This document shows positions 15,441-61,056 of a stretch of DNA of 64,000 nucleotides, in pieces (position 1 is the stretch's first letter; each line of letters opens with the position of its first letter). Location of the stretch: positions 62,001-126,000 of the forward strand of contig JAWMAR010001141.1 of assembly GCA_036785375.1 (NCBI GenBank), read 5' to 3'. A program made the translations under genes and the position numbers. The notes beneath the pieces are model-generated. The model was not told the origin of the DNA. It searched no databases and saw only the letters and a list, made by a program, of their open reading frames with translations. This DNA is from Leucoraja ocellata (lineage: Eukaryota).

Positions 15441-15596
15441 TTAATTATTATCAGTGAGAATTGTTGCGTACACAACTTCTGCGGCACCTTGCCTCTTGGC
15501 TTGTCCTTGTGTGTTCAGATCCTGAAGGTTCATGTAAGTATTATCCGTGTTAGCTGGAGGACGGGTTGTCACGGTGGTATAAATGACAGGGGTTTC
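15441..15596 (-). CDS. Gene 2 terminal cytoplasmic exon with ITIM motifs
   Basis: ETPVIYTTVTTRPPANTDNTYMNLQDLNTQGQAKRQGAAEVVYATILTDNN*. Acceptor tttctcacttgactccaaag is phase 0, matching exon 16276-16328 (GSNGQRIMSQQNPADSFK|gtaagg). Confidence 0.85.
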   Translation of the reverse strand, partial: ETPVIYTTVTTRPPANTDNTYMNLQDLNTQGQAKRQGAAEVVYATILTDNN

Positions 15597-18500
15597 CTTT
15601 GGAGTCAAGTGAGAAACATAATTACTTAAAGATAGTGTCAGAAGGTGGACAGAAACGCTGGAGAAACTCAGCGGGTCAGGCAGCATCTATGGAGCGAAGG
15701 AATAGGTGACGTTTCGGGTCGAGACCCTTCTTCAGACTGATGTCAGGGGAGTGGTTGGTACAGAGATAAAATGTAGTCGGAGACAGTAAAACTGGTGGGA
15801 GAATTTGGAAGGGGGAAGGGATGGAGAGAGAGGGAAAGCAAGGGCTGCTTGAACATTGACGTCACCAACCCGAAACATCACCTATTCCTTCGCTCCATGG
15901 ATGCTGCCTCACCTGCTGAGTTTCTCCAGCATTATTTTCTACATTCGATTTTTCCAGCATCTGCCGTTCTATGGAGGGCAATTCACTTAGAAATCCGCCC
16001 GTCTTTGTGGTGTGGGAGGAAACTGGAGCATTCTGACAAAACCCAGGTGGTCAAACTCTGCAAACCTGCAAACTCCACGCAGACAGCACCGGTGGTCAGA
16101 ATCGAACCCAGACAAGGCAGTGGAGAAGGCCAAGGATGGGCACTCGATCATTTAGGTGCCATGTTAGGAGCGGGCAAGTGATCGATATGTCATGTGATGT
16201 GGGACCCTGCAGGGATGACTTCCAGTAAGGTTGTTTTATTTCCCTGGGGCTACAACATCTGTGGCATTGCCTTACCTTGAAACTGTCTGCTGGATTTTGC
16301 TGACTCATAATTCTCTGTCCATTTGAGCCTGAAAAATATAATGATAATGAATTCTTATATGGACTTCATTGAAGTCAAACACGCGAAGGATAATGTTGCT
16401 TTTTAACCATTGATGACATACTTGGTGCACTTTCATGAAACTTATGGGCCTGTCCCACTTAGGCAACTTTTTCGGCGACTGCGGGAGACTATGCAGTCGC
16501 CACATGTTTGCGGGTGGTTGCCGGGGGGTTGCCGGGGAGTCGCCTTCATGGTCGTGAGGAGTTCCCGCATTCTGGAAACTAGTCGCGGCCTCATTTTGGT
16601 CGCCGTGAATTTTACTTCACGATTTCTAGGGCCACCTCCTTGAGTACTCTGGGATGCAGACCATCAGGCTCTGGGGATTTATCTGCCTTCAATCCCAACA
16701 GTTTACCTAACACCATTTTCTGACTAGTGTGGATTCCCTTCAGTTCCTCCCTCCCACTAGATCCTCGGTCCCCAGTATTTCCGGGAGATTGTTAGTGTCT
16801 TCCTTAGTGAAGACAGAACCAAAGTACTCGTTTAACTGTTCTGTCATTCCCTTGTTTCCCATTATAAATCCACCTGCCTCTGACTGTAAGGGACCTACAT
16901 TATTCTTCACTAATCTTTTCCTTTTTACATACCTAAATAAACTTTTAAGTCAGTTTTTATATTCCCCGCAAGCTTTCTTTCATGCTCTTATCACCCCCCC
17001 CCCCCCCCCCACTCTTAATTAACCCCTTTGTCTTCCTCTGTTGAGTTCTAAATTTCTCCCAGTCCTCTGGTTTGCCACTTTTTCTGGCCAATGTATATGC
17101 GGCTTCCTTGGGTTTAACACTATCCTTGACTTCCCTCGTCAGCCACATTTGAGCTGCCTTCCCAGTTTTATTTATTCGCCAGACAGGGATGAACAATTTC
17201 TGGAGTTCATCCTTACGGTCTTTAAATCTTTGCCATTGCATCTCCACTGTCAACCCTTTAAATATAGTTTGCCAGTCTATCCTAGCCTCTTCCCCTCAAA
17301 CCTTCAAAGTCTCCTTTAATGAATAGTACCCTAGTCTCTGAATTAACCGTGTCACCCTCCATCCTAATGCAGGATTCCACTATATTATGGTCACTGTTGC
17401 TCAAGGGACCTTGCGCAACAAGATTGCTAAACCTTCCTCATTACACAATACCCAGTCTAAGAGACACTGCCCGATAGTCGGTTCCTCTACATATTGGTAT
17501 AAAAACCCATCCCGTATACATTCCAGGAAATCCTCCTTCTCAGTGTTGTTACCAATTTGGCTGGCCCAATGCATGAGCAGCACAGGTAAGTGGGACTAGC
17601 GTAGGGGAGCACCTTGGGCGCCAGTAAGGACGAGTTGGGCCAAAGGTCCTGTCTCTCTGGTATAAACCCATGCGCTCACAGGGAGAACGTACAAACTCCA
17701 TACAGACAGCACCCATAGTCAGGATCGAACCCGTGTTTCAGGCGTTGTAAGGCAGCAACTCTCCCACTTGGCCACTGTGCCGCCTTGAAATGTCACCTGT
17801 CCATGTCCTACACAGATGCTGCCTGACCCGCTGAGTTACTCCAGCACTTGGTGTATTTCCCTGCTGTTACACAGTAGGTGAATGGTCTGAGTTTGTGAAA
17901 GGCACCTCAGAGAGAAGGGCCAAATCGTTGTTAATCAACAAGAGTGGCCCCTTGATATTTACGTACATTCATCGCAACTTACCAGTTTTCTTTCTCTGCC
18001 TCATTTTTACACATAGGATAATGCCAGCGATGAACAGAAGAAAGACAATTGTCAAGGCGATCGGTAGAACAACCTTCCATGAAAATGTGACCCTGCAAAA
18101 TACAAGGAAAAACAATGACGAGCTCATGGTAATAGGACTGATTCCCTCCCCAGTAACGAACCATGCGTTTCGATCCGGAAAGTAAAAATGTGGATCTAGA
18201 CTTGAATGCAGTGCAGGTTAAATTCTAGAACATTATGAATAATTCTATTGGTATTTAAGGAACTATAAAGTAGTTTAGAGTTTAGAGATATGACATGAGA
18301 GCAGGCCCTTTGGCCCATTGAGACCATGCTGACCATTTAGGGACGGCACGGTGGCGCAGTGCCTCACAGCGCAGGAGCCCCGGGTTCGGTCCTGACTACC
18401 AGTGCTGTCTGTACAGAGTTTGTACGTTCTCCCTGTGATCGCAAGTTTTTTCCAGGTTCTCCGGTTTCCTCCCACATTCCAAAGACGTGCGGGTTTGTAG

Positions 18501-21500
18501 GTTAATTGACTTCTGTAAATTGTTCCTAATGTGTAGAACAGAACTGGTGTATGGGGTGATCGCTGCTCAGAGCGGACTCGGTGGGCCAAAGGGCCCATTT
18601 CCACGCTGTATCTTTAAACTGAGCTGAACTGAACTTAACTAATTTGTTCTCAGGTGAGGCTGAGTTGACTCTTCGAGTTACTGACCTGTTTCCATCTGAT
18701 GAACCAGAAGCCTCATTGGAACTTGCTGCCTTGGTGGTTGGTGTACCTTGAGGCATGGTGGTCAGAGTGGTTGTGGTGGAAGCCTTTGTGATTATTGTTG
18801 TAGAGGTGGTGCTGACCATGTCTGGGCTGCTTGTTGGAGATCCTTGTGGAGATAAAGTGAATGAAGTTTTTGAACATTAAATGTGTGAAATCACGTTCTG
18901 TGCCACTTTAGTGATGTGTGGGAGATGCCTCAGTTGGCAGCGCTCTTGCTCTGTGTGGGGAGATTCCTGGGTTCAAATCCCAATCCAGACATTTGGGCAA
19001 AGATCCTTCTGAGGCCACCATAGATGGACCAAGCCCCTTGATCTAGACCGGAGGCTCACCCATTAAGATGCCACCAGATTGTCGCAAGCATTCAGAGACT
19101 TCTTTCATGCCCTCCATAGTCCCACAGGCTGTGTTATCTGCCTGCTGCTAGAGTTAGGCACATGTCTTCTACATTGGAGAAGAACTTGGGAGCGGGAGGA
19201 TCCATGGACTATTTTCATTACGCGGACTGAATTCAAAATAATGCAATTTGGTTGGAGGTATCTACCTGAAACATTAACTCTCGTTCTCTCTCCACAGAAG
19301 CTGCCCGACCCGTTGAGTATCTCAACTTGTACAGTTTGTGTGACTCAGTGTAAAGTCTATATCACTCATCTCTTGAGGATTCTTAGTTCATTAGTTCATA
19401 AGTGATAGGGGCAGATTGAGGCCACTTGGCCCATTGAGTCTATTCCGCCTTTCAATCACGGCTGATCTATCTCTCCCTCTCAACCCCATTCTCCTGCCTT
19501 CTCCCCATATTGCTTGACACCCGTACGAATGGAGAACCTGTCAATCTCCACCTGAAAATACCCAATGACTTGGCCCTCATTGGAAACATGGTAAAAGATT
19601 TTCCCTGTACCTCAGTACAGACGACAACAATAAACTGAGCTCATGAATCACCAAAGTTTGTGAGACACAAGGAATTGCAGGTGCTGGAATTTTAAGCAAA
19701 ACACAAAGTGCTGGAGAAACTCTGCAGGTCAGGCAGCATCCGTTGTAGAAATGAACTGACACTCTTTAGTGTTGGGTCCCTTCTTCAGATGTTGTGGGTG
19801 TGACAGTGACGGGCAGGGGGAGAGGGTGAGGGGGCACCAGAGGTTCTGGCTGTTCCCCTGCTCCAGTGAGGGGCGGCAGAGGTTCTAGACCCGGAGCGAT
19901 CGTCTTTGGGGAAATGAGCCGCCAGCAGCAGAACCGCCGGTCCCCATTGATGAGCCCCCCCCCCCCCCCCCCACACACACTGCTCCTGGGACAGTGGGCT
20001 CTTGGTGTGGCCCCATGAGCCGGGACCCCAGTAAATGTGCTCCCCCCTCCTTCACCCCGACCCCCGGGGATGTGGCACCGAGTCACCGTCAGCACCGAGG
20101 CCGGGAATTCCCAGGCTGGAATGTTCACATCTGGGAGAGTGAGGAGAGATCGTCAACGTACCTTCAGAAACCGTCAATGAGATGGAGGTCCTTTCATTGC
20201 TTGAAAATATTCCCTTTACAATCACACACCAGTAGCGTCCTTCATCACTCTTCTCCAGGTTGTCGATGGTTACTGAAACTATCAGTTGTGTTTTGTTATC
20301 ACTCATCGATGTTCTCCTATATTGTGGTGAGTCATCAGTAGAAACCACGGTATCAGATATTATGTAATAGTAACCTTTCTTCCATAGCTTCTTGTTGTCA
20401 GTGTATTCCTGACCATACTGACATTCCACTGTGACCGACTGCCCCAACTCTCCCCTCACCTCCTTGGGTCCAGTTATTCCCCTTAACCCTGTGGACACAT
20501 TAATGATGAAAGATCACTCACACTGCAGCAACACAAGCTGAGGTTTAACAATAAAAAACATGTCATTTGTGCTGTTCAGACAGGTTCATGGTTTCGCATA
20601 GATCATGTGTAGCAAGGAACTGCAGGTGCTGGTTTACACCAAAGATAGACACAAAGTGCTGGAGTAACTCGGCGGATCAGGCAGAATCTCTGGAGAAAAT
20701 GGATAGGTGTCCTTTTTGGGTCGGGACCATTCTTGATCTCCCGGTTGCCAACCCTGTCCATGTCCCTTCCCATTCCCACACTGACCTTTCTGTCCTGGGC
20801 CTCCTCCATTGCCAGAGTGAGGCCACATGCAAATTGGAGGAACCGCACCTCATATTGGGCTCAGGTAGTTTACAACCCAACGGTTTGAACGTTGGTTCTC
20901 TAATTTTAAGTATCTTCTACTAACCTGCCCCCTCCCCCATTGACTCCTATCTCCACCCGGGTTTCCCACCACCTGCCCCAGTGAGGGGCGGCAGAGGTTC
21001 TGGTCCCGGAGCGATCGTCTTCGTGGAAATGAGCCGTCAGCAACAGAACCGCCGGTAGATGGGATCTTCCGTGGGGCTGGTGTCTGACAGCCCCCCCCCC
21101 CCCCCCCCCCCCCCCATACTGCTCCAGCGACAGTGAGCTCTTGGTGTGGCCCCACGGGCCGGGACCCCAGTAAGTGAGTTATCCACCCAACCCCCTTACC
21201 GCGACCCCCCCGGGGATGTGGCACCGAGTCACCGTCAGGACCGAGGCCGGGAATTCACAGGCTGGAATTTTCACATCTGGGAGAGTGAGGAGAGATCGTC
21301 AACGTACCTTCAGAAACCGTCAATGAGATGGAGGCCGATTCAATGAATGAATGTTTTCCCTTTACTATCACACACCAGTAGAGTCCTTCATCACTCTTCT
21401 CCAGGTTGTCGATGGTGACTGAAACTATCGGTTGTTCTTTGTCATCAGTCATCGATGTTCTCCCTTGTTGTGGGTGATCAGTAGAAACCACGGTAGAAGA

Positions 21501-24298
21501 TGGAAGGAAATAATCACCTTTACTCCATAGCTTGTCGTTGTCTTTGTATTTCCGATCATACTGACATTCCACAGTGACCGACTGCCCCAACTGTCCCCTC
21601 ACCTCCACGGCTTCAGTTATTCCCCTTGATCCTGTTGGCACATTAATGATGAAAGATCACTCACACTGCAGCAACACAAGCTGAGGTTTAACAATAAAAA
21701 ACATGTCATTTGTGCTGTTCAGACAGGTTCATGGTTTCGCATAGATCATGTGTAGCAAGGAACTGCAGGTGCTGGTTTACACCAAAGATAGACACAAAGT
21801 GCTGGAGTAACTCAGCGGGACGGGCAGCATCTCTGGAGAAACCGACGGGTGATGTTTCCTCGCCCATTCCTTCTCTCCAGAGATGCTGCCCGTCCCGCTG
21901 AGTTACTCCAGCATTTTGTGTCTCTCTTCTTCTGCATAGATCCTGTTGCACTTTAATGCTTTTCCCGCTGGTGTTAATTCCCATTTCACCGGGGATTGTT
22001 CCCCAAGTTCCAGTGAAAGCAGAACTGAGTTCCTTCTTGAACACTTTGTCTACTCCACTGCGATATCTATCTTCCAGCATCTGCAGTTCCTTCTTGAACA
22101 CTGCTTCTGAATCTACCTGGCGCCCAGATCCTCCTTCCCTGTGGGCGTGGCTTGACCGGAGTGGTGGTCATGTGACAGGAAGCCAACCTGTCACTCACTC
22201 TGACCCACCCTGTGTTCAATCTCACTACAACCCACTTCCCCATTGAACTAGTAGAAACAAGGAACTGCAGATGCTGGTTAATGTACAAAAGGACACAAAG
22301 TGCCGGAGTAACACAACGGGACAGGAACTATCTCTGGAGAAAGAGGAACTCTCTGGGTGAAAAGATATTTCCTCATCTGAGTCCTCAATGGCCTACCCGT
22401 TATTGAGGTCACAACCTTAAACTGGACAGGAACTATCTCTGGAGAAAGTGGATAGATGATGATTCATAGAAACATATAAACATAGAAAATAGGCGCAGGA
22501 GGAGATGATTCGGCCCTTCGAGCCGGCACTGCCCAGTTCTGCTTGCTCCCGTTATCCCATGATTCCATTAGCCCTAAGAGCTAAATCTAACTCTCTCTTG
22601 AATACATCCAGTGAATTGGCCTCCACTGCCCTCTGTGGCAGAGAATTCTACAGATTCACAACTCTGGGTGAAAAGGTTTCTACCCCATCTTAACTTAATT
22701 GTGTGTGTTAGTTGTCTGTGCGTTATGTGTGTGTGTGTGTGTGTGGGAGGGAGGGAGGGAAGTAGAGAAAGAAGGGATGGAGCGAATGGGACCCTCTGGA
22801 TACATGGATAGGACAGATTTGAAAGGACTTGGACCAAACATGGACAGGTGGGACTAGTGTTGCTGAGACATGTTGGCCGGTGTGGGCAAGAAGGGCCGAA
22901 GGGCCTGTTTCCACACTGTATCACTCTATGACTCTAACACATGTGAAACTCTGCAGATTCAGGAGCTGGGGTGGAGACACATCATCGCATCAGTCCAGGT
23001 CGGCTCACAAGCCACAAGACAAATGCCTTGAAGGAGAACTCAGAGGCTTTGGAAAGCACAGTGTGTAGAACAGCTCGAGCAGCAGAGTCTGTTGTAAGGC
23101 AGCTGGTTTTTCTCAGAAGGGAGAGATTACCACAACTTCTCCAAATGCTAAATTGGACAGTCACTCTGGTGCTTCCTCATTTGAGATGACGCCTGTTCCC
23201 AATGGCTGGCTTTCACAGGTTTTTTCTTTGAATGTGCTAAGGTTTAGGTTCAACATTTCCCATTGCAGTGCGTGGAGGGAGTGCCGTGTGTCTTTGATAG
23301 ACACTAAAATGCTGGAGTAACGCAGCGGGTCAGGGGGCATCTCTGGAGAGAAGGAATGGGTGACGTTTCGGGTCGAGACCTTTCTTCAGACCCACAGTCA
23401 GGGAGGGAGGAAGTCAAGAGATATGCAAGGGGTAAAGCATTTAGCTGATCTGCTGTCAAGTCACTGAGCACACAGCATCACAACAGTCATTAGTGCAGGG
23501 AAGAACAAGTCTGCAAGCATTTTATCTTTAGCAGCTCGTAGCCCAGTTGTCTGCTCTGTGGCTCAAAATAATTCAAGGTGCTGGCAAATAATTCTGAAGA
23601 ACAGATCACAAGTTCATTAGTACTAGGAGCAGAATTAGGCCATTTGGCCCATCAAGTCTACTCTCCCCCATTCAATTATGGCTGATCTATCTTTCCCTCT
23701 CAACTAAATCCTCCTGCCTTTTCCCCAGGTCTCCTGACACCAGTACTGATCAAGAATCTATCCCATCTCGGCCTTAGAAATACCTATTGATGGCCTCCGC
23801 AGTCTGTGGCAATGAATTTCCACAGTTTCTGTCTCACAAAATTCCTCCTCATCTCCTTCCTAAAGCAACGCCCTTTAATTCTGAAGCTGCGACCTCTGGT
23901 CCTAGAGTCTCCCACTAGTGTAAACATCCTCACCCCATCCACTCTATCCAGGCCTTTCACTATTCAGTAAGTTTCAATGAGGTCCACAAGGCAAGGCAAG
24001 CTGTAGATAGTTATCTCCCGACTTGGGCTGCAACACAACACGACAACAACCACTGATGGAAGTCTCTACAGGAACTAACGAGTGTTGAGCAATTCATCAT
24101 CAGCTCCCCACACAGTACAGAGAGGTCTGTGGTTACAAATAATTCAAGGCGTTGGTAAATAATTCCTCAGAACAGAGCATTTTGTAAAACAACGATTTAC
24201 CTGGTGTGAGACCAACAGCGACAAGAACCAACAGAGCGACCTGTTCCCCTGGATCTGGGCCATCTCTGGTGGGTGAATTCTCCCTGTCCCACCGCCAT
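15441..24298 (-). CDS. Gene 2: inhibitory CD300/pIgR-like (MDIR-type) receptor, about 407 aa if the leader is intact. Exons 24201-24298 (leader, +1 frameshift), 21308-21631 (Va), 20162-20488 (Vb), 18686-18842 (mucin stalk), 17983-18092 (TM), 16276-16328, 15441-15596 (ITIM tail)
   Basis: GT-AG introns with consistent phases from Va to the stop (1,1,2,1,0). TM VVLPIALTIVFLLFIAGIILCV then KMRQRKK. Tail contains VIYTTV, TYMNL and VVYATI. The leader is 98 nt against 97 nt in the gene 3 paralog. Confidence 0.8.
15705..15740 (-). ncRNA. Minimal hammerhead ribozyme motif in a Penelope-derived repeat (also 1297-1332 and 56649-56685 on +)
   Basis: CUGAAGA-A-GGGU(CUCG)ACCC-GAAAC-GUC core with a palindromic minimal stem III. 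Confidence 0.55.
16618..17575 (-). mobile_element. CR1 LINE endonuclease/linker fragment in a gene 2 intron
   Basis: EDFLECIRDGFLYQYVEEPT...LDWVLCNE; PEDWEKFR. Confidence 0.8.
17983..18092 (-). CDS. Gene 2 transmembrane exon (uncharged)
   Basis: VTFSWKVVLPIALTIVFLLFIAGIILCVKMRQRKKT; acceptor ttttgcag, donor gtaagt, phase 2-1. Confidence 0.88.
18686..18842 (-). CDS. Gene 2 Ser/Thr-rich mucin-like stalk exon
   Basis: GSPTSSPDMVSTTSTTIITKASTTTTLTTMPQGTPTTKAASSNEASGSSDGNR; 157 nt, acceptor ctttatctccacaag, donor gtcagt. Confidence 0.85.
20162..20488 (-). CDS. Gene 2 V-set Ig exon Vb
   Basis: GQSVTVECQY...W...SDEGRYWC...ISLTVSE; 327 nt, phase 1-1, ccacag/gtacgt. Confidence 0.92.
21308..21631 (-). 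CDS. Gene 2 V-set Ig exon Va
   Basis: GQSVTVECQYDRKY...W...SDEGLYWC...ISLTVSE; 324 nt, phase 1-1. Confidence 0.92.
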
Positions 24299-32934: not shown

Positions 32935-34227
32935 CTGAAAAGCTAAACGATGATTATTGGGCGTCATTTCCGTCAGAATAACAATATTGATATAACGATT
33001 ACCCTTCATTTTTATCTTATTCTTCTAACGCGTGTCCACAGTTCATTACGTAATCATTTAACCGTTTTTACATCCCCATTGTTCAATGGTTCAATGGTAC
33101 TTTATTGTCTCATGCACATGCGTACAGTGACATTTCTTTTGTATAGAATTCAGTAAAAATCTTACTTGATATAAGCACAGCTGAAGCTAAGAACAAGAGT
33201 ATTAATAGCAGATTATATGATGCAGTACACAAGAGTTGCCACATTACTGGCAGTATCTTATATTCTTAAACATCAAACTGGGCTTAAAGGCCATTTTATT
33301 TGGGTTTAAAGGCCCGTTGTCATGGAGACGGCACTGGGTGGGAGTTGCAGGGGTCGGCCTGGCCTGGCGATGTTGTCGGTGCCTCCACCACCGCTCCGTG
33401 CCGCTGCAGGCCGTGTCCGATCCGCGCGCTCGTCCCCGACTCTGTGGGGCCTCCAGCGGCACCCGATCCACTGGCTGCTGCAGGGCCTCCAGCAGCCCAC
33501 TCGCACTCCGCCCACACCTCGACCCACCAACGCACCCTTTTCCCCTGCCTCCCACGGCCGTCTCCATGCGAGGTGAGGCCTCACCCAGCCAGCTCACCGG
33601 CGCTGTTCCTCTCCTTCCTCCACCACTGCCGACCCCATCTCCAAGGTCTTGGCTTTTTTTTCCTTGAATAACAATTAAAACACAGTTTATAATCTCCACC
33701 ATCAAATTTTACCCGAGGAAATGACCCAGGGCGGCACAGTGGCGCAGCGGTAGAGTTGCTGCCTTACAGCGCCAGAGACCCGGGTTTGATCATGACTACG
33801 GGTGCTGTCTGTACGGAGTTTGTATGTTCTGCCTGTGACAGCGTGGGTTTTATCTGGGTGCTCCGGTTTCTTACCACAATCCAAAGACGTGTAGTTTTGT
33901 AGGTTAATTGGCCTCTGTATAATTGTAAATTGTCCCTCGTGTGTAGGATAGTGCGAGTGTACGGGGTGATCATTGGTCGGCGCGGACTTGATTGGCTGTA
34001 TACCCTTTAATAATATCTGACAATGTGCACTTTAACCACGTGTGATTTTTTCAATTACAAATCTCAAATTGTGGAATACAGAGGCAAATAAATAAATGAA
34101 GGGTCTTTGTCCCAAACATTATGGAGGGCGCTGTATGTCCACACTTTATCTCTACAAATCGAAAGTAAATTCCCATCATTTCCAGTTGAATTTAATGTGA
34201 ACATCAGAGTGAAGAGATTGCAAACTT

Positions 34228-35391: not shown

Positions 35392-35422
<31 letters not shown>

Positions 35423-50050: not shown

Positions 50051-53000
50051 CGTAGGTAGTTGTCTCCCTTCTCTACAGGGAGCTAGCTGTGTGCAATTTG
50101 GTTGCACACAACACGACGACAATCGTTGATGGAACGATCGAGTGTTGAGCAGTTTATCATTAGCACCTCACCCAGTACAGTGAGGCCGGTGGCTAAACAT
50201 CATTCAAGGCGCTGAGTAAATAATTCTAAAGAACAGAGCATTTTGTAATGGTTCGCACCAGAATAGTGGAGGATCTCCTTGTTCTGGGGCAAGTGGTATC
50301 TCATCAACCAAGGACACCAAAGTCATCTGTAGGATAGTTGTTGTTTTTTAAAGGGAACTTGTTGTGTCCAAATTAGATGCACACAAGTCTGCAAGGGCGG
50401 AATGTAGAAACAAGGAACTGCAGATGCTGGTTTATACCACATATAGGCACAAAGTGTTGGAGCATCTCAGCAGGTCAAGCAGCTTCTCTGGACAAAAAGG
50501 ATGGGTAACATTTCTCGATGGGACCCTTCAGAGTGGTCCTGACCTCCCAACTACTCCATTCGAGACCTTGGAACTATCTTTAATTGGATTTTACTAGACT
50601 GCATCTTGCATTGAACATTATTCCCTGTATCCTGTACCTGTGGACGGCTCGATTGTAATCATATACAGTGTTTTCACTGACTGGGTAGCATACACACAGA
50701 AAAGCTTTTCACTGCACCTCGGTACACGTGACTATAATTGGCTAAACTAAAGAGGTTGCCACAGATTCCTTGAATGCAAAAATGAAGTCATTGAGACTTT
50801 CAGAATGGGTTGGGTTTCACATGGTTTTTCAATGTGTGACCTGTGGTCTAGGTTCAACATTTCCCACGCTGTTTCTAGCAGGAGTCCTGTGTGACTTTAC
50901 CACGCTAACCGAGCCACACCAAGGCCCAGTGTTAGGTTCTGCAGTGCAAGCTCAGTAGGTGAAAACTATTGAGTGAGTTAGAGAGATGTTGGTTCAGTTC
51001 CCACTCCAGAACGCCGAGCACGGAGTGAGAGTTGTACTGAGGGAGCTCCGCAATGGAAACATAGAAGCATAGAAAATAGGCGCTGGAGTAGGCCATTTGG
51101 CCCTTCGAACCAGCACCGCCATTCAATATGATCGTGGCAGATCAACATAAATCAGTACCCAGTTCCTGCTCTCTCCCCATATCCCTTGATTCCGTTTGTT
51201 CTAAGCACTGTGTCTAAAGTTGCTGGAGGTGCTGTCACTCTGATGAGGCATTTAGCTGGCCTGCTGCTCTGCTGTCTGCTCTCACAAGCCTGCTCTCTCT
51301 CTTCAGGGCGGCACGGTGGTGCAGCGGTTTGCTGCTGCCTCACAGCGCCAGAGACCCGGGTTCGATCCTCTCTACAGGTGCTGTCTGTGTGGAGTTTGAA
51401 TGTTCTACCTGTGACCTCATGGGTTTCCTCCAGGTGCTCCGGCTTCCTCCCACATCCCTAATCCATGCGAGTTTGTGGGTTAAATACCTCTGCAAGATTG
51501 TCGCAAATGTGTAGGGAATGGATGACAAAGTGGGATAACAGAACTAGTGTGTGTACAGGTAGACAACAATGCTGGAGAAACTCAGCGTTTTTGTCTACCT
51601 TCGCTTTTCCAGCATCTGCTGTTCCTTCTTAAACATAGTGTGTACAGGTGATCAGTGGTCGGCATGGACTCGGTGGATCAATGGGCCTGTTTCCATTCGC
51701 TATCTCTAAACCAAACTAATTCTACTCTTATCACTTATGACTTTATGACAAAAATTCAGCCATCTTTTATTACATTGGATTATTTTAATCATTATTCAAT
51801 GTGCAGGGTTTCACACAGCAATTCAATTGGTAGTAAAGTTAAAAGTTCACATTCTGGAGAGCCAGCTTTGAGTTCTAGTCTATGTTCTGCTGTCTTTTGT
51901 GTGAATGTCAGGATGTACAGACGTGTCTGCAAACACAGGTACAGAATTTGGCCATTTGCTCCATCGATTCTACTCCGCCATTCAATCATGGATGATCTAT
52001 CTTTCCCACTCCATCCCATTCTCCTGCCTTCTCCCCTCAACCTTTGACACCCTGAGTAAACATGTCAATCTCCAATTTAAAAATATCCATTGACTTGGCC
52101 TCCACAGCCGCCTGTGGCAATTAATTCCACAGATTCATCACCCTCTGGCTAAAGAAATTCCTCCTCAAGTGGTCAAGGTAGATTGGACATAGGTGTGGTG
52201 TGGTGATGCTGTAGGGTCAAGGTGATGAGATTTGTACATCTCCAACTGGTGAACACCCTCTCTGGCCCTGAAAAGCTAAACGATGATTATTGGGCGTCAT
52301 TCCGTCAGAATAACAATATTGATATAACGATTACCCTTCATTTTTATCTTATTCTTCTAACACGTGTCCACAGTTCAATACTTGTAATCATTTAACCGTT
52401 TTTATATCCCCATTGTTCAATGGTTCAATGGTACTTTATTGTCTCATGCACATGCGTACAGTGACATTTCTTTTGTATAGAATTCAGTAAAAATCTTACT
52501 TGATATAAGCACAGCTGAAGCTAAGAACAAGAGTATTAATAGCAGATTATATGATGCAGTACACAAGAGTTGCCACATTACTGGCACTATCTTATATTCT
52601 TAAACATCAAATTGGCTTAAAGGCCCGTTTTATTTTGGGCTTAAAGGCCTATTATCGTGGAGACGGCACTGGGTGGGAGTTGCAGGGGTCGGCCTGGCCT
52701 GGCGATGTTGTCGGTGCCTCCACCACCGCTCCGTGCCGCTGCAGGCCGTGTCCGATCCGCGCGCTCGTCCCCGACCTCTGTGTGACCTCCAGCGGCACCC
52801 GATCCACCGGCTGCTGCAGGACCTCCAGCAGCCCACTCGCAGTCCGCCCACACCTCGACCCACCAACGCACCCTTTTCCCCTCGCCTCCCACGGCCGTCT
52901 CCATGCGAGGTGAGGCCTCACCCAGCCAGCTCACCGGCGCTGTTCCTCTTCTTCCTCCACCACTGCCGACCTCATCTCCAAGGTCTTGGCTGTTTTTTTC

Positions 53001-53565: not shown

Positions 53566-53680
53566 TCACCTTTTCAAAGTTGTCACACAGCTGATGGAAA
53601 CCGGGAAGAGAAGCAGAATTCCAAAGAGTACCCAGCGTAACACACCCCAAACACGGCAAACGATGTTCAGCATGGTGTCC
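53566..53680 (-). CDS. Gene 4 Arg-containing transmembrane exon
   Basis: Same translation as 34228-34342. Confidence 0.82.
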
Positions 53681-56600
53681 CTGGAAATCCAAGGAAATAT
53701 TATTACTTCCACACAGAGTTACCACAGATCAACGCTGGCAATTTTCTTTCATCATGTTGCACACGGAATCATTCAGTGTGATTCAAGGTTGTGGCTTAGA
53801 CATTGGTGAGATGTTGATATCGCAACATGCACCCATTCCTTGGAGGTGTTCCACGACTACATACATTAACAACTTAGATGTTCATTTTGATGGTCAGACA
53901 TAGAGCACGAAAACATGTCCTTTGACCCAATTTCCCCCACGCCGACCAAGATGGCCTTATCTACACTAGTCCCATCTGCCGGCCTTAGATGTTAATGTTG
54001 GAAGTATGATTTACGAGTTTACAGATTACACCAACATTGTCTCATTTTGGATAGTACGATAATCATAGACCACAGAGGGATAAGAAGCAACTGGTATGTT
54101 GGGCAGAGCAATGCCAGCAGGTATTGAACCATGATAAGTGTGACGTTATTTGTTTTTGGCATCATGTAAGGGTAGACATTCATAATGGTAGGGCCACTGG
54201 GTGTACTAAGGACAGAGGGACTTTAGTCAGGGCCAAGGAGTATTTATCAATGGACTGGAATGTGATCAGCCACGCTTTCTCAAAGTACTGGGACTTTGAG
54301 TCACTGACCTGTGTCGAGGCGATGAACCAGGAGTCCCTGGTGGTCGATGCTTCCGGAGGCAGAGTGGGTGTGGTGGTTCCTGAGGTGGTGGTGACCATAC
54401 TTTAATCCAGTTTAGTTTAGTTTTGAGATATAGCGCGGAAACAGGCCTGACGGCCCATGGAGTCCACACTGACCAGCGATCCTCGCACACTAACACTAGG
54501 CTACACACACTAGGGGCAATTGACACATACGCCAAGCCAATCTACTTACATACTTGTATGTCTTTAGAGTGTTGGTGGAAATCAAAGATCTCAGAGAAAA
54601 CCCATGCGGTCATGGGGATAACGTACAAACCCCGTACAGGCAGCACCTGTAGTCGGGATCGAACCTGGGTCTCCAGCGCTACAAGCATTGTAAGGCAGCA
54701 ACTCTACCGCTGCGCCACCATGCAACCCCCCACACACACACACACACACACGCACCAAAGTGGTGAGGATATCTGGGTGATATGTTTGAGACCCTTGTGA
54801 AGATAAAGTGAATGAAGTCTTTGAACATTAAATGTTTATAATCACGTTCTGTGTCACTTTAGTGACGTGTGGGAGATGCTTCAGTTCGGAACGATCTTGC
54901 TCTGTGTGGGGAGATTCTTGATTCGAATCCCAAACCTGAGATTTGAGCAAGGATCCTTCCTAAACCACCATAGATGGACCAAGCCCCTTGATCTAGACAT
55001 GAGGCTCGCCCATTGAGATGTCAGCTCAGCGGTAGAGTTGCTGCCTCACAGCACAGTAGACGCGGGGTCGATCCTGATACCGGTGCTGTCAGTGCAGAGT
55101 CTGTACGTTCTCCATGTGATCGCAAGAGTTTACTCTGGGTTCTCCAGTTTCCTCCCACATTCCAAAGACGTGCGGGTTTGTAGTAAGTTGCCCCTAGTGT
55201 GTAGAACAGAACTGGTGTATGGGGTGATCGCTGCTCAGAGCGGACTCGGTGGGCCAAAGGGCCCATTTCCATGCTGTATCTTTAAACTGAGCTGAATTGA
55301 ACTGAACTAATTGGTTCTCAGGTGAGGCTGAGTTGGCTCTTCGAGTTACTAACCTGTTTGTAGGTGTTGAACCAGGAGACTCTGTGGAACTTGCTGCCTT
55401 GGTGGTTGGTGCATCTTGAGGCATGGTGGTCAGAATGGTTGTGGTGGAAGCCTTTGTGCTTATTGTTGCAGAGGTGGTGCTGACCATGTCTGGGTGGCTT
55501 GTTGGAGATCCTTGTGGAGATAAAGGGAATGACGTTTTTGAACATTAAATGTCTGAAAGTACGTTCTGTGCCACTTTAGTGATGTGTGGGAGATGCCTCA
55601 GTCGGGAGCGCTCTTGCTCCGTGTGGGGAGATTCCTGGGTTCAAATCCCAATCCAGAGATTTGAGCAAAGATCCTTCTGAGGCCACCATAGATGGACCAA
55701 GCCTCTTGATCTAGACCGGAGACTCACCCATTAAGATGCCACCAGATGGTCACAAGCATTCAGAGACTTCTTTCATGCCCTTCAGAGTCCCACAGGCTGT
55801 GTTATCTGCCTGCTGCTAGAGTTAGGCACATCTTTTCTACATTGGAGAAGAACTTGGGAGCGGGAGGATCCATGGACTATTTTCATCACGCGGACTGAAT
55901 TGGAAATAATGCAATTTGGTTGGAGGTATTTACCTGAAACATTAACTCTCATTCTCTCTCCACAGAAGCTGCCCGACCCGTTGAGTATCTCATCTTGTAC
56001 AGTTTGTGTGGCTCAGTGTAAAGTCTATATCACTCATCTCTTGAGGATTCTTAGTTCATTAGTTCATAAGTGATAGGGGCAGATTGAGGCCATTTGGCCC
56101 ATTGAGTCTATTCCACCTTTCAATCATGGCTGATCTATCTCTCCCTCTCAACCCCATTCTCCTGCCTTCTCCCCATATCGCTTGACACCCGTACTAATGG
56201 AGAACCTGTCAATCTCCACCTGAAAATACCCAATGACTTGGCCCTCATTGGAAACATGGTAAAAGCTTTTCCCTGTACCTCAGTACAGACCACAACAATA
56301 AACTGAGCTCATCAATCACCAAAGTTTGTGAGACACAAGGAATTGCAGGTGCTGGAATCTTGAGCAAAACACAAAGTGCTGGAGTAACTCAGCAGGTCAG
56401 GCAGCATCCGTGGAAGGAATGAACTGACAATGTTTAAGGTTGGGTCCCTTCTTCACCGGAGGAACAGCACCTCATATTCCGTTTGGGGAGTCTGCACCCC
56501 GGGGGCATGAACATCGACTTCTCCCAATTCTGTTAGTCCTTGCTGTCTCCTCCCCTTCCTCAGCTCCCCTGCTGTCCCCTCCCACCCTCCAGCCTTCCGG

Positions 56601-56973: not shown

Positions 56974-59900
56974 ACACTGCTCCTGGGACAGTGGGCTCTT
57001 GGTGTGGGCCCATGGGCCGGGACCCCAGTAAATGTGCTCCCCCCTCCTTCACCCCGACCCCCGGGGATGTGGCACCGAGTCACCGTCAGGACCGAGGCCG
57101 GGAATTCCCAGGCTGGAATGTTCACATCTGGGAGAGTGAGGAGAGATCGTCAACGTACCTTCAGAAACCGTCAATGAGATGGAGGTCCTTTTATTGATTG
57201 GAAATATTCCCTTTACAATCAGCACACACCAGTAGTATCCTTCATCACTCTTCTCCAGGTTGTCGATGGTGACTGAAACTATCCGTTGTTTTTTGTCATC
57301 AGTCATCGATGTTCTCCTATATTGTGGGTCATCAGTAGAAACCACGGTAGAAGAATTTGTGTAATAATAACCTTTACTCCATAGCTTGTCGTTGTCTTTG
57401 TATTTCCGATCGTACCGACATTCCACAGTGACCGACTGCCCCACCTCTCCCCTCACCTCCTCGGGTCCAGTTATTCCCCTTGACCCTGTGGGCACATTAA
57501 TGATGAAAGATCACTCACACTGCAGCAACACAAGCTGTGGTTTAACAATAAAAAACATGTCATTTGTGCTGTTCAGACAGGTTCATGGTTTCGCATAGAT
57601 CATGTGTAACAAGGAACTGCAGGTGCTGGTTTACACCAAAGATAGACACAAAGAGCCGGAGTAACTCAGTGGGACAGACAGCATCTCGGGAGAAACCGAC
57701 GGGTGATGTTTCCTCACCCATTTCCTTCTCTCCATAGATGCTGCCCTTCCTGCTGAGTTACTCCAGCATTTTGTGTCTCTCTCCTTTTGCATAGATCCTG
57801 GTGCACTTTAATGCTTTTCCCGCTGGTGTTAATTCCCATTTCACTGGGATTATTGTTGTAGAGGTGGTGGTGACCATGTCTGGGCGGCTTGTTTGAGACC
57901 CTTGTGGAGATAAAGTGAATGACGTTTTTGAACATTAAAAGTCTGAAAGCACGTTCTGTGCCACTTTAGTGATGTGTCGGAGATGCCTCAGTCGGGAGCG
58001 CTCTTGCTCCGTGTTGGGAGATTCCTGGGTTCAAATCCCAATCCAGAGATTTGAGCAAGGATCCTTCTGAGGCCCCCATAGATGGACCAAGCCCCTTGAT
58101 CTAGTCATCTCATGAGGATTCTTCGTTCATACGTTATAGAAACATAGAAAATAGGTGCAAGAGGAGGCCATTCAGCCCTTCGAGCCTGCACCGCCATTCA
58201 CTGTGATCAGGGCTGAACGTCCCCAATCAATAACCCGTGCCTGCCTTCTCCCCATATCCCTTGATTCCACTAGCCCCTGGAGCTCTATCTAACTCTCTCT
58301 TAAATCCATCCAGTGATTTGGCCTCCACTGCCCTCTGTGGCACGGAATTCCACAAATTCACAACTCTCTGGGTGAAAAAGTTTTTTCTCACCGCAGTCTG
58401 AAATGGCCTCCCCTTTATTCTAAGGCTGTGGCCCCTGGTTCTGGACTTGCCCAACATTGGGAACATTTTTCCTTCATCAAGCTTGTCCAGTCCTTTTATA
58501 ATTTTATAAGTTTCTATAAGAAACCCACTCATCCTTCTAAACTCCAGTTTTGAGCCTAGTCTTTTCAATCTTTCCTCATATGACAGTCCCGCCATCCCAG
58601 GGAGCAATCTCGTGAACCTACGCTGCACTGCCTCAATCACAAGGATGTTCTTCCTCAAATTAGACCAAAACTGTACACAATACTCCAGATGTGGTCTTAC
58701 CAGAGCCTGATACAACTGCGGAAGAACCCCTCTACTACTGTACTGAAATCGTCTTGTTATGAAGTTCATGTGATAGGGGCAGAATGCGGCCATTTGGCTT
58801 ATTTATGTCTACTCCGCCATTCAATCATGGCTGATCTATCTCTCCCTCTCAACCCCATTATCTTCCCTTCTCCCCATATCGCTTGACACTCATACTAATC
58901 GAGAACCTGTGAATCTTAAAAATACCCAATGATTTGGCCTTCATTGGAAACATGGTAAAAGCTTTTCCCTGTACCTCAGTACAGACGACAACAATAAACT
59001 GAACTCATGAATCACCAAAGTTTGTGAGACACAAGGAATTGCAGGTGCTGGAATCTTGAGCAAAACACAAAGTGCTGGAGTAACTCAGCAGGTCAGGCAG
59101 CATCTGTGGAAGGAATGAACTGACAATGTTTAGTGTTGGGACCTTTCTACAGATGTTGTGTGTGTGGTGGGTGTGACAGTGACGGGCAGGGGGAGAGGGC
59201 ACCAGAGGTTCTGGCTGTTCCCCTGCCCCAGTGAGGGGCGGCAGGGGTTCTGGACCCGGAGCGATCGTCTTTGGGGAAATGAGCCGCCAGCAGCAGAACC
59301 GCCGGTCCCCATTGATGAGCCCCCCCCCCCCCCCCCCCCCCACACACACACTGCTCCTGGAACAGTGGGCTCTTGGTGTGGCCCCATGGGCCGGGACCCC
59401 AGTAAATGTGCTCCCCCCTCCTTCACACCGACCCACGGGGATGTGGCACCGAGTCACCGTCAGGACCGAGGCCGGGAATTCCCAGGCTGGAATGTTCACA
59501 TCTGGGAGAGTGAGGAGAGATCGTCAACGTACCTTCAGAAACCGTCAATAAGATGGAGGTCCTTTTATTGATTGGAAATATTCCCTTTACAATCAGCACA
59601 CACCAGTAGTATCCTTCATCACTCTTCTTCAGGTTGTCGATGGTGACTGAAACTATCCGTTGTGTTTTGTTATCACTCATCGATGTTCTCCTATATTGTG
59701 GGTCATCAGTAGAAACCACGGTAGAAGAATTTGTGTAATAATAACCTTTACTCCATCGCTTCTTGTTGTCACTGTATTCCTGACCATACTGACATTCCAA
59801 AGTGACCGACTGCCCCAACTCTCCCCTCACCTCCTTAGGTCCAGTTATTCCCCTTGACCCTGTGGACACATTAATGATGAAAGATCACTCACACTGCAGC

Positions 59901-61056
59901 AAGAGGTTCTGGACCCGGAGCGATCGGCTTTGGGGAAATGAGCCGCCAGCAGCAGAACCGCCGGCAGCACAAGCTGAGGTTTAACAATAAAAAACATGTC
60001 ATTTGCGCTGTTCAGACAGGTTCATGGTTTTGCATAGATCATGTGTAGCGAGGAACTGCAGGTGCTGGTTTAAACCAAAGATAGACACAAAGTGCTGGAG
60101 TAACTCGGCGGATCAGGCAGAATCTCTGGAGAAAATGGATAGGTGTCCTTTTCGGGTTCAGACCATTCTTGATCTCCCGGTTGCCAACCCTGTCCATGTC
60201 CCTTCCCATTCCCACACTGACCTTTCTGTCCTGGGCCTCCTCCATTGCCAGAGTGAAGCCACATGCAAATTGGAGGAACCGCACCTCATATTGGGCTCAG
60301 GTAGTTTACAACCCAACGGTTTGAACGTTGGTTCTCTAATTTTAAGTATCTTCTACTAACCTGCCCCCTCCCCCATTGACTCCTATCTCCACCCGGGTTT
60401 CCCACCACCTGCCCCAGTGAGGGGGCGGCAGAGGTTCTGGTCCCGGAGCGATCGTCTTCGTGGAAATGAGCCGTCAGCAACAGAACCGCCGGTAGATGGG
60501 ACCTTCCGTGGGGCTGGTGTCTGACAGCCCCCCCCCCCCCCCATATTGCTCCAGCGACAGTGAGCTCTTGGTGTGGCCCCACGGGCCGGGACCCCAGTAA
60601 GTGAGTTATCCACCCAGCCCCGTTACCGCGACCCCCGGGGATGTGGCACCGAGTCACCGTCAGGACCGAGGCCGGGAATTCACAGGCTGGAATGTTCACA
60701 TCTAGGAGAGTGAGGAGAGATCGTCAACGTACCTTCAGAAACCTTCAATGAGATGGAGACCAATTCAATGGGTGAATCGTTTCTCTTTACTATCACACAC
60801 CAGTAGAGTCCTTCATCACTCTTCTCCAGCTTGTCGATGGTGACTAAAACTATCTGGTGTGTTTTGTCATCAGTCATCGATGTTCTCCGTTGTTGTGGGT
60901 CATCAGTAGAAACCACAGTATAAGATTTCTGGTAAGAATCACCTTTCCTCCACAGCTTCCTGTTGTCCTTGTATTCCTGACCATACTGACATTCCACTGT
61001 GACCGACTGCCCCAACTCTCCCCTCACCTCCTCGGGTTCAGTTATTCCGCTTGACC
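53566..61056 (-). CDS. Gene 4 (5'-partial): activating-type receptor with three V exons. Exons 60733-61056 (Va), 59533-59859 (Vb), 57159-57485 (hybrid V), 55354-55510 (stalk), 53566-53680 (Arg-TM); leader predicted just beyond the window end
   Basis: All V exons are open and phase 1-1. Stalk and TM translate identically to gene 3. Window position about 63960 corresponds to about 42000 in the gene 3 unit, placing the leader roughly 600-700 nt past 64000. Confidence 0.72.
56456..56746 (+). mobile_element. Penelope-like 3' fragment inserted only in this copy
   Basis: Nearly identical to 1105-1394; 11-bp TSD tcccttcttca (56445-56455 and 56747-56757); empty sites at about 19780 and 37115. Confidence 0.88.
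57159..57485 (-). CDS. Gene 4 membrane-proximal hybrid V exon
   Basis: ORF 57049..57495; 327 nt, phase 1-1. Confidence 0.9.
57758..57900 (-). pseudogene. 3'-truncated stalk exon fused to intron sequence (fusion junction about 57850)
   Basis: Intact acceptor, then GSQTSRPDMVTTTSTTII, then a switch to the intron normally upstream of Va; TAA at 57758-57760; no donor seen. Confidence 0.75.
58134..58760 (-). mobile_element. HER1/CR1 LINE 3' fragment
   Basis: ORF 58227..58793 (LVRPHLEYCVQFW...GYGEKAGTGY). Confidence 0.9.
59533..59859 (-). CDS. Gene 4 V exon Vb
   Basis: ORF 59423..59869; 327 nt, phase 1-1. Confidence 0.9.
60733..61056 (-). CDS. Gene 4 V exon Va
   Basis: ORF 60680..61066; 324 nt, phase 1-1. 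Confidence 0.9.

What the first reader, a model, noticed from the sequence alone, without database searches (positions are those of the whole stretch)
15441..61056. Paired inhibitory/activating immune-receptor family hidden in the duplication
Seen: genes 2, 3 and 4 share a homologous ectodomain cassette (leader-V-V-mucin stalk) but end differently. Gene 2 has a neutral TM and a tail with VIYTTV, TYMNL and VVYATI. Genes 3 and 4 have an unrelated TM exon, VWGVLRWVLFGILLLFPVSI, with an intramembrane Arg and a stop almost immediately after. Established: ITIM tail versus charged TM plus short tail defines paired receptors (CD300, LILR/PIR, KIR, fish NITRs); an Arg near the outer TM typically pairs with FcRgamma/CD3zeta-type ITAM adaptors; CD300/pIgR-like MDIRs are known in skate. 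Inference: this is a recently expanding one-inhibitory/several-activating recognition system of an elasmobranch, probably shaped by pathogen decoy ligands. I cannot tell from sequence alone whether this subfamily has been described.
Basis: partly seen in the sequence, partly recalled or inferred. Interest (0 to 1): 0.9.

Follow-up and report, generated by a model that had tools for sequence, protein, structure and literature searches.

The report
Paired skate immune receptor gene cluster
This stretch of skate DNA holds three recently copied genes for cell-surface immune receptors, one built like a brake and two built like accelerators, an arrangement already known in kind and already annotated in related skates and rays.

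Summary
All genes lie on the minus strand. Seven V-set exons of pIgR/CD300 type form three tandem genes.

- **Gene 2** ends in a neutral membrane span and a tail with VIYTTV, YMNL and VVYATI.
- **Genes 3 and 4** end in a different membrane exon carrying WGVLRW.

Annotated proteins from seven batoid species show the same two endings spliced as predicted. Of 17 such proteins, 7 have the Arg form and 6 have the ITIM form. These include two Leucoraja erinacea 'polymeric immunoglobulin receptor-like' proteins nearly identical to gene 4 and to the tail of gene 2. So neither ending is a chance ORF.

- The Arg exon has a canonical donor, and in homologues it splices to one more short exon.
- Gene 4 has three V exons, and its leader lies off the window.
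- Gene 2's leader carries a 1-base insertion and gene 3's last exon a 1-base deletion. These are either real defects or assembly errors.

RNA reads were too few to show any splice joint.

V exons differ 2-8 times more than the flanking non-coding DNA, and dN/dS exceeds 1 in 21 of 21 pairs.

Paired activating/inhibitory receptors of this type are already reported in skates (MDIRs). I class this as a new member of a known kind. Two earlier scan notes describe similar clusters elsewhere in this genome.

The parts
24201..24298 (-). Gene 2 leader exon (ATG to donor CCAG|GTAAAT). It is 98 nt, with one extra G relative to gene 3's leader, so the signal-peptide frame is lost.
21308..21631 (-). Gene 2 V exon 1 (V-set)
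   Evidence: (V-set 9.4e-15)
20162..20488 (-). Gene 2 V exon 2 (V-set)
18686..18842 (-). Gene 2 Ser/Thr/Pro-rich stalk exon (S+T+P fraction 0.59)
17983..18092 (-). Gene 2 uncharged transmembrane exon (VVLPIALTIVFLLFIAGIILCV, then KMRQRKKT)
16276..16328 (-). Gene 2 short cytoplasmic exon (SNGQRIMSQQNPADSFK)
   Evidence: Matches P0005 and P0004.
15441..15596 (-). Gene 2 last exon with two ITIM-type motifs (VIYTTV, VVYATI), one YMNL motif and the stop codon
   Evidence: (51 of 52 residues identical to the P0005 tail)
42627..42723 (-). Gene 3 leader exon, intact (MAVGQGEFTHQRRPRSRGTVALLVLVAVGLTP)
38202..38513 (-). Gene 3 V exon 1
37511..37834 (-). Gene 3 V exon 2
36023..36179 (-). Gene 3 stalk exon (S+T+P fraction 0.61)
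34232..34342 (-). Gene 3 Arg-bearing transmembrane exon (DTMLNIVCRVWGVLRWVLFGILLLFPVSISCVTTLK). Acceptor TTTCCAG|G, donor AAAAG|GTGAAA.
33581..33662 (-). Gene 3 last exon. It is 1 nt shorter than in gene 4, at an A-run. It therefore reads RKKKPRPWRWGRQWWRKERNSAGELAG and stops at 33583-33581, not at the homologous stop 33596-33594.
60733..61056 (-). Gene 4 V exon 1
   Evidence: One residue differs from P0006.
59533..59859 (-). Gene 4 V exon 2
   Evidence: Same residues as in P0006.
57159..57485 (-). Gene 4 V exon 3
55354..55510 (-). Gene 4 stalk exon, identical to gene 3's (0 of 157 mismatches)
53570..53680 (-). Gene 4 Arg-bearing transmembrane exon, identical to gene 3's (0 of 111 mismatches)
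52931..53000 (-). Gene 4 last exon, in frame (RKKTAKTLEMRSAVVEEEEEQRR, then stop)

Best explanation
The window holds part of a tandem, birth-and-death cluster of receptor genes. It comes from a skate: Leucoraja erinacea or a very near relative.

**Common ectodomain.** Each gene has two or three V-set domains of the pIgR/CD300 type and an O-glycan-type stalk.

**Gene 2 is the inhibitory type.** It has an uncharged membrane span and a cytoplasmic tail of about 80 residues. The tail carries two ITIM-type tyrosines, which would recruit SHP-type phosphatases after phosphorylation. It also carries a conserved YMNL, a Grb2-type pYxN site.

**Genes 3 and 4 are the activating type.** The same ectodomain is joined to a different membrane exon. 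This exon has an invariant Arg-Trp near the outer end of the span. It is followed by a short tail without tyrosine. The receptor would therefore signal only through a separate acidic-TM ITAM adaptor.

**What is shown and what is inferred.**
- Shown: exon chains by homology, splice sites, conservation of motifs, the duplication, and fast V-exon change.
- Inferred: phosphatase recruitment, adaptor pairing, the ligand, and expression of these particular copies.
For: - Pfam V-set on all 7 V exons.
- The best solved relatives are pIgR (4e-26) and CD300LF (5e-14).
- All 17 acceptors are AG and all 16 donors are GT.
- Gene 4 is open through all six exons seen, from an assumed entry phase 1.
- L. erinacea P0006 is 3 V + stalk + ..VWGVLRWVLFGILLLFPVSISCVTTLK + RKKTAKTLEMRSAVVEEGEEQRR. 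It matches gene 4 (V1 one difference, V2 none).
- L. erinacea P0005 carries ..ADSFK|ETPVIYTTV..NTYMNL..VVYATILTDNN, with 51 of 52 residues identical to gene 2's tail.
- Of 17 batoid homologues, 7 have W[GA][VL][LT]RW. Six have two ITIMs plus YMN[LF] at the same places. Both forms occur in Leucoraja, Narcine and Hemitrygon (alignments).
- Gene 2 and gene 3 share 93.3% DNA identity over 2.2 kb, from V2 through the stalk exon and about 0.3 kb of the following intron. Homology ends there.
- dN/dS is above 1 in 21 of 21 V pairs. The pooled test on independent pairs gives p=0.034. V exons are more diverged than non-coding DNA in 5 of 6 blocks at p<0.02.
Against: - RNA: in four RNA runs of unknown tissue the exon bins had depth of 1.3 or less, and no stalk-to-TM joint was listed.
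- Gene 2's leader is frameshifted, with a stop 5 codons into V1. Gene 3's last exon is frameshifted. So two of the three copies may be defective, or the assembly may be wrong.
- A. radiata P0001 has the neutral TM but no ITIM exon in its model.
- The most hydrophobic 19-residue window of the Arg exon starts just after the Arg. The Arg may therefore sit at the interface rather than inside the bilayer.
- No adaptor was identified. A 2014 survey reports no FcRgamma chain in cartilaginous fish (passages).
- The homologues are automatic gene models, and I could not see their RNA support.
Confidence: 0.72

Rival explanations
1. The copies in this window are largely dead members of a birth-and-death family. 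Gene 2 would be a null through its leader frameshift. Gene 3 would carry a garbled tail. The working pair would lie elsewhere in the cluster.
For: - The leader is 98 nt in gene 2 against 97 nt in gene 3, which gives a stop 5 codons into V1.
- Gene 3's last exon is 69 nt against 70 nt in gene 4.
- Only trace RNA lies over the exons.
- RefSeq proteins P0005 and P0006 differ from the window's exons, so other copies or alleles exist.
Against: - Each defect is a single base, and every other exon of genes 2 and 3 is open with intact splice sites.
- One defect sits in an 8-A run, a usual place for assembly error.
- Gene 4 is intact in all exons seen.
- The stalk and TM exons of genes 3 and 4 are identical (0 of 268 mismatches), against 2.1% in the non-coding DNA around them.
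Confidence: 0.3
2. The Arg-TM forms do not couple to an ITAM adaptor. They would act as non-signalling ligand sinks or decoys, or the Arg would serve membrane positioning or pairing with another partner.
For: - No adaptor was found here.
- FcRgamma is reported absent from cartilaginous fish in a 2014 survey (passages).
- The Arg lies at the edge of the most hydrophobic window.
- A phmmer search with the exon found nothing outside this family: 2 hits, namely P0006 and one weak repeat-like hit.
Against: - Arg-Trp is invariant in 7 of 7 Arg-form proteins from five genera, while neighbouring residues change.
- The tail is short and tyrosine-free in all of them.
- By established knowledge (recalled), this layout is that of adaptor-dependent receptors such as GPVI, FcalphaRI and NKp46.
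- Two unchecked scan notes report a DAP12-like ITAM exon elsewhere in this genome.
Confidence: 0.2
3. Both endings are alternative 3' cassettes of long transcripts that run across neighbouring units, rather than products of separate genes.
For: - NCBI lists the Narcine ITIM form (isoform X2) and the Arg forms (X3, X5) as isoforms of one gene.
- Their stalks differ by one residue up to the stalk/TM junction.
Against: - In the window each unit has its own leader.
- No neutral-TM or ITIM exon lies between gene 3's last exon and gene 2's leader. No Arg-TM exon lies in gene 2.
- The Narcine isoforms start with different leaders.
Confidence: 0.07
4. The Arg-bearing 'exon' is a chance open frame in an intron or intergenic stretch.
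For: - It is short.
- Genes 3 and 4 are so alike that their agreement proves nothing.
- No splice joint was seen in RNA.
Against: - The same segment is spliced into 7 annotated proteins of 5 other genera, with conserved W..(L/T)RW..F..L...VS..C.
- It has a canonical acceptor and donor in the right phases.
Confidence: 0.02

Closest known systems
RefSeq models 'polymeric immunoglobulin receptor-like' of Leucoraja erinacea (P0005, P0006) and 'CMRF35-like molecule 3' of Amblyraja radiata (P0001-P0003)
   Same: - Same leader, V domains, stalk and the two alternative endings.
- P0006 is near-identical to gene 4. P0005's tail differs from gene 2's by one residue.
   Different: - P0005 has three V domains and gene 2 has two.
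- P0006 differs from gene 4 in V3 and in the residues just before the membrane span.
- So these are alleles or sister copies, not the same sequences.
- They are automatic predictions with generic names, not studied proteins.
Mammalian CD300 / CMRF35-like (MAIR/LMIR/CLM) paired receptors
   Same: - V-set domain related by sequence (CD300LF 5e-14).
- A stalk is present.
- Clustered genes, with near-identical ectodomains joined either to ITIM tails or to a charged membrane span with a short tail. The MAIR-I/II abstract in the listing describes this pairing.
   Different: - Two or three V domains instead of one.
- Only the canonical Cys pair in the V domains here.
- An Arg near the outer end of the span. 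The Lys or Glu of most CD300 activating members is recalled, not tested.
- The V domains are closer to pIgR than to CD300.
Polymeric immunoglobulin receptor (pIgR) and teleost pIgR-like proteins
   Same: The best sequence match of the V domains is to pIgR, at 4e-26 to domain 5 of the solved structures. The V domains are arranged in tandem.
   Different: No long transcytosis tail. The endings are ITIM or charged-TM instead. Binding of polymeric Ig was not tested.
[quoted passage not shown] 2006)
   Same: [quoted passage not shown]
- Variable numbers of domains per protein (recalled).
   Different: - The original paper is not held and no MDIR sequence was available, so identity with MDIR1-5 could not be tested.
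- No Raja eglanteria protein was among the 18 hits.

Membership tests
Paired activating/inhibitory Ig-superfamily receptors (general kind) | Highly similar ectodomains in clustered genes | tested here: met
   Gene 2 against gene 3 is 93.3% identical over 2.2 kb, including V2 and the stalk. There are seven related V exons in 46 kb.
Paired activating/inhibitory Ig-superfamily receptors (general kind) | Inhibitory member with an uncharged TM and cytoplasmic ITIM(s) | tested here: met
   Met by sequence only. VIYTTV and VVYATI sit in a tail spliced as in P0005 and P0004, and are conserved in 6 of 6 ITIM-form homologues. Phosphatase binding was not tested. The leader is frameshifted in this copy.
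Paired activating/inhibitory Ig-superfamily receptors (general kind) | Activating member with a basic residue in the TM and a short tail without signalling motif | tested here: met
   Met by sequence only. WGVLRW is conserved in 7 of 7 Arg-form homologues, and the tail of about 23 residues has no Tyr. The depth of the Arg in the bilayer is uncertain.
Paired activating/inhibitory Ig-superfamily receptors (general kind) | Association of the activating member with an ITAM adaptor | not testable with these tools
   Passages of PMC4016189 report no FcRgamma in cartilaginous fish.
CD300 / CMRF35-like | Single V-type domain with a second (extra) disulfide | tested here: not met
   There are two or three V exons per gene. 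Only Cys22 and Cys86 are present in all seven V exons. That the extra disulfide defines CD300 is recalled.
CD300 / CMRF35-like | V domain detectably related to CD300 V domains | tested here: met
   phmmer against solved chains gives CLM-1/CD300LF 5.2e-14 and CMRF35-H 2.2e-11.
pIgR | V domains of pIgR type | tested here: met
   The best PDB matches are pIgR / secretory component, at 3.9e-26 to 1e-24.
pIgR | Long cytoplasmic tail with sorting signals, no ITIM or charged-TM pairing, and polymeric Ig binding | tested here: not met
   The tails are ITIM-type or about 23 residues long. Ig binding is not testable here. The defining feature itself is recalled.
Skate MDIR family | Sequence relationship to MDIR1-5 of Raja eglanteria | not testable with these tools
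   The paper is not held and no MDIR sequence was returned.
Skate MDIR family | Skate multigene family with activating and inhibitory forms and CD300/pIgR-like domains | tested here: met
   Window features fit the description given in passages of PMC3031540.

The most novel reading that the evidence does not exclude
The W-x-x-(L/T)-R-W membrane exon would be an old, batoid-wide activating module with no detectable relative outside this family. Its partner would be an adaptor not yet identified, in a lineage where FcRgamma was reported missing. Finding that partner would show how receptor-adaptor pairing was organised near the base of jawed vertebrates. The ectodomain exons would meanwhile be driven apart by ligand-directed selection several times faster than their introns.
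Probability: 0.2. Interest if true: 0.6.

Novelty: new member of a known kind. Interest (0 to 1): 0.35.

Why it matters
- The paired brake/accelerator design of innate immune receptors, with its typical signs of recent duplication, exon-level swapping of the signalling end and fast-changing binding domains, is present and conserved across skates and rays.
- For the field this is an extension, not a surprise. Skate MDIRs and mammalian CD300, LILR and KIR already established the principle, and genome annotation already predicts these proteins.
- Two things are useful. One is the clean exon map with precise defects. The other is the strong exon-versus-intron contrast, which marks the likely ligand-binding patches.
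- The identity of the adaptor for the Arg form in cartilaginous fish remains open.

Tried and rejected
- **Contig look-up.** I could not read the loci of the homologous proteins or see their intron structure.
- **RNA reads.** It gave almost only reads on interspersed repeats, 85-98% of which run on into unlike sequence. It showed no exon joints, so it neither supports nor refutes the splice.
- **Tail search.** A word-index search with gene 2's tail for short spliced fragments found no candidate.
- **Membrane-exon search.** A full phmmer scan with the 50-residue frame around the Arg exon found only P0006 (1e-10) and one weak hit, P0019 (3.9e-4, 29%, 8 stretches). I did not examine P0019 and take it for chance.
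- **Structure.** Prediction from the 7-row V alignment failed (mean pLDDT 40.2). I made no fold search and did not map variable sites on a structure.
- **Literature.** The MDIR paper (PMC3701310) and a review (PMC2823954) are not held. Searches for adaptors or this family in cartilaginous fish gave only PMC3031540 and PMC4016189 as relevant. I read passages of both, not whole texts, and also passages of PMC6795676, which held nothing on these receptors. I opened no supplementary files.
- **An error of mine, corrected.** I first mis-read gene 3's shifted tail as a long extension. One search corrected it to 27 residues.
- **Rejected readings.** The Arg exon is not a chance ORF. Genes 3 and 4 do not hide an ITIM exon of their own in the window, since one search found no second copy.

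Full report
**What is there**

The window has no N runs. All features of the finding lie on the minus strand.

A tblastn of one V exon against the window finds nine V-like exons. Seven are closely related:
- gene 2: 21631-21308 and 20488-20162
- gene 3: 38513-38202 and 37834-37511
- gene 4: 61056-60733, 59859-59533 and 57485-57159

Two distant V-like exons lie at 5700-5446 and 4055-3795.

All seven related exons pass Pfam V-set, at 44-55 bits against a cut-off of 26. Against solved structures the best relatives are pIgR (3.9e-26) and then CD300LF/CLM-1 (5.2e-14).

A self-comparison shows the duplication:
- 31698-37123 matches 51029-56455 at 97.5%
- 22787-27055 matches 41191-45471 at 96.8%
- 18360-20535 matches 35711-37881 at 93.3%

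VIYTTV, TYMNL and VVYATI sit in one open frame ending at the stop 15441-15443. VWGVLRWVLFGILLLFPVSI occurs at 34255-34314 and 53593-53652.

The ITIM pattern alone is common: 201 matches in the six frames. It carries weight only through its context and conservation.

The neutral-TM exon and the coding part of the ITIM exon are single-copy. The Arg exon has exactly two copies. Gene 2 holds no relic of the Arg exon, and genes 3 and 4 hold no relic of the ITIM-type exons.

**Gene models**

I searched exon by exon and never joined exons into a query.

A search with the V part of an uninterrupted window frame returned three Amblyraja radiata 'CMRF35-like molecule 3' proteins. A second search with one of them returned 18 proteins. 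Seventeen are from batoids: Amblyraja, Rhinoraja, Leucoraja, Narcine, Mobula, Hemitrygon and Pristis. One is from a teleost.

Mapping these on the window and reading the splice sites gives the exon map in 'parts'. All 17 acceptors are AG and all 16 donors are GT.

Two Leucoraja erinacea proteins settle the endings:
- **P0006** has three V domains, the stalk, then ..NRDIVLNVRRVWGVLRWVLFGILLLFPVSISCVTTLK followed by RKKTAKTLEMRSAVVEEGEEQRR. Its V1 differs from gene 4's by one residue, and its V2 by none.
- **P0005** has a neutral span, then ..SNEQRIMSQQNPADSFK followed by ETPVIYTTV...NTYMNL...VVYATILTDNN. Fifty-one of 52 residues are identical to gene 2's last exon.

So the source is Leucoraja erinacea or something very near it. 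The proteins are alleles or sister copies of the window's genes, not the same sequences.

1. The Arg exon (34342-34232) is not terminal. Its 'KR-stop' is the read-through of a good donor, AAAAG|GTGAAA. Homologues splice on to one more exon.
2. Gene 4 has three V exons. Its leader is beyond the window's end.
3. Gene 2's leader is 98 nt against 97 nt in gene 3, through one extra G. The hydrophobic core of the signal peptide is lost, and V1 would stop after 5 codons.
4. Gene 3's last exon is 69 nt against 70 nt in gene 4, at a run of A. It reads RKKKPRPWRWGRQWWRKERNSAGELAG-stop instead of RKKTAKTLEM...EQRR-stop.

With a 97-nt leader assumed, gene 4 is open through all exons seen. I could not tell whether the two single-base defects are real.

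**Conservation of the two endings**

The 17 batoid proteins sort as follows:
- **Arg form, 7 proteins.** They carry W[GA][VL][LT]RW: A. radiata x2, Leucoraja, Narcine x2, Hemitrygon, and one fused Mobula hypostoma model.
- **ITIM form, 6 proteins.** They carry a neutral span plus two ITIM-type motifs and YMN[LF] at matching places: Rhinoraja, Leucoraja, Narcine, Hemitrygon, Pristis x2.
- **Neither, 4 proteins.** P0001 has the neutral span but another last exon. P0007, P0011 and P0013 are truncated or odd.

Both forms occur in three species. In the alignment the Arg-Trp, a Phe, a Val-Ser and a Cys of the span are kept, while neighbours vary. This rules out a chance frame.

A phmmer scan of 1.84 billion representatives with the frame around the exon found only P0006 and one weak hit. 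So the module has no detectable relative outside the family at that sensitivity.

**RNA**

No indexed RNA run held the stretch. Raw-read RNA runs under the same species label were offered.

I laid four of them (X9, X13, X16, X17; tissues unknown; 5-32% of each run read) on 33400-38600:
- Nearly all laid reads sit on interspersed repeats (33574-34269, 35662-36009, 36706-37227) and run on into unlike sequence.
- Exon bins reach at most 1.3-fold depth in X9 and X13, and zero in X16 and X17.
- No V2-stalk, stalk-TM or TM-last joint is among the 15 joints shown; a further 77 were not shown.

**Evolution of the binding domains**

Nei-Gojobori dN/dS is above 1 in 21 of 21 pairs of the seven V exons, with a range of 1.14-3.82. 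Three phylogenetically independent sister pairs, pooled, give 64 non-synonymous against 10 synonymous changes (one-sided Fisher p=0.034).

Aligned duplicate blocks show V exons 2-8 times more diverged than the non-coding DNA around them in 5 of 6 comparisons. Examples:
- 39 of 324 against 43 of 1879, p=4e-13
- 32 of 324 against 6 of 444, p=6e-8
- the sixth comparison, 7.1% against 5.8%, is not significant (p=0.24)

The stalk exon of gene 2 also differs more from gene 3's (16 of 157) than the non-coding DNA does (4.1%).

Genes 3 and 4 have identical stalk and Arg-TM exons (0 of 268 mismatches) within 2.1% diverged surroundings. Zero mismatches is not significant at that length.

Variable columns fall in four patches: after Cys22, at 39-46, at 52-56 and at 91-100. 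By the usual V-set layout (established knowledge) these are the loop regions. My structure model was too poor to confirm this (pLDDT 40).

Synonymous change in the exons also exceeds intron change in some pairs. Patchwise gene conversion from other family members probably contributes alongside selection.

**How it most likely works**

*Shown*
- Ectodomains of two or three pIgR/CD300-type V domains on a Ser/Thr/Pro-rich stalk (fraction 0.59-0.61).
- One ending with a neutral span (mean hydropathy 2.99) and conserved tyrosine motifs.
- One ending with a span carrying a conserved Arg six residues into a 23-residue hydrophobic stretch, followed by basic residues and a short acidic tail without Tyr.

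*Inferred from the established behaviour of ITIM receptors and charged-TM receptors*
- The first ending recruits SHP-type phosphatases and dampens signalling.
- The second ending needs an acidic-TM ITAM adaptor.
- An Arg near the outer end is the pattern I recall for FcRgamma/CD3zeta-coupled receptors. This is recall, not a test.

Which adaptor is used is open. Passages of PMC4016189 (2014) state that no FcRgamma chain or PIGR was found in shark genomes then available. Two unchecked scan notes mention a DAP12-like ITAM exon elsewhere in this genome.

The homology between gene 2 and gene 3 stops about 0.3 kb downstream of the stalk exon. The two endings were therefore combined with a common ectodomain by recombination inside that intron.

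**Comparison with what is known**

In function and layout this is a paired-receptor family like CD300/MAIR, LILR/PIR, KIR and NITR.

By sequence it is nearest to pIgR and CD300 V domains. It is neither pIgR proper (no long sorting tail) nor a typical CD300 (multiple V domains, only one Cys pair).

[quoted passage not shown] The original paper was not held. From recall of its abstract, MDIR1 has a charged membrane residue, and MDIR2 and MDIR3 have ITIMs. Whether the present genes are an MDIR subfamily could not be tested.

In the held library, searches found no paper that describes this particular batoid family. The library lacks most subscription journals, and I opened no supplements.

**Verdict**

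The interpretation as paired receptors is well supported by homology but not by function or RNA. It is a further member of a known kind, already predicted by genome annotation.

Similar clusters were noted by the scan on two other pieces of this genome (s1-884712 and s1-884625, unchecked). Interest is moderate to low.

Noticed in passing
window 24201-24298 (-): Gene 2's leader exon has one extra G compared with gene 3's leader (98 against 97 nt). This shifts the frame through the signal peptide. Every other gene 2 exon is open.
   Followed up: partly
window 33581-33662 (-): Gene 3's last exon is one base shorter than gene 4's, at a run of A. The result is a different 27-residue basic tail.
   Followed up: partly
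window 20162-21631, 37511-38513, 57159-61056 (-): V exons are 2-8 times more diverged than the introns around them, and dN/dS is above 1 in all 21 pairs. Differences cluster in four patches of the domain.
   Followed up: yes
window 57848-57934, 35428-35496, 54759-54827 (-): Partial copies of the start of the stalk exon. One lies between gene 4's V2 and V3. One lies in the stalk-TM intron of each of genes 3 and 4. These are traces of unit fusion or rearrangement.
   Followed up: no
window 5446-5700 and 3795-4055 (-): Two further V-set exons, only 24-32% identical to the family. They probably belong to a different pIgR/CD300-like gene. One is below the Pfam cut-off (21.6 bits) and one is above it (34.2 bits).
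   Followed up: no
window 33574-34269, 35662-36009, 36706-37227: Interspersed repeats inside the introns collect hundreds of RNA reads on both strands in all four runs. Most of these reads run on into unlike sequence, so they are transcribed copies from elsewhere in the genome.
   Followed up: no
window 16960-17295 (-): An open frame resembling a LINE ORF2 fragment, inside the intron between gene 2's TM exon and its cytoplasmic exon. Not tested against any library.
   Followed up: no
proteins P0007-P0010 (Narcine bancroftii), P0012-P0014 (Hemitrygon akajei): Ray homologues keep extra Cys residues in the V domain (for example WC..C) that the skate V exons lack. NCBI lists the Narcine ITIM form, Arg form and a form without TM as isoforms of one gene.
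   Followed up: no
protein P0001 (Amblyraja radiata): This neutral-TM model ends in a different short last exon, without the ITIM exon. The matching stretch of the window (about 15350) has no acceptor site in front of it.
   Followed up: partly
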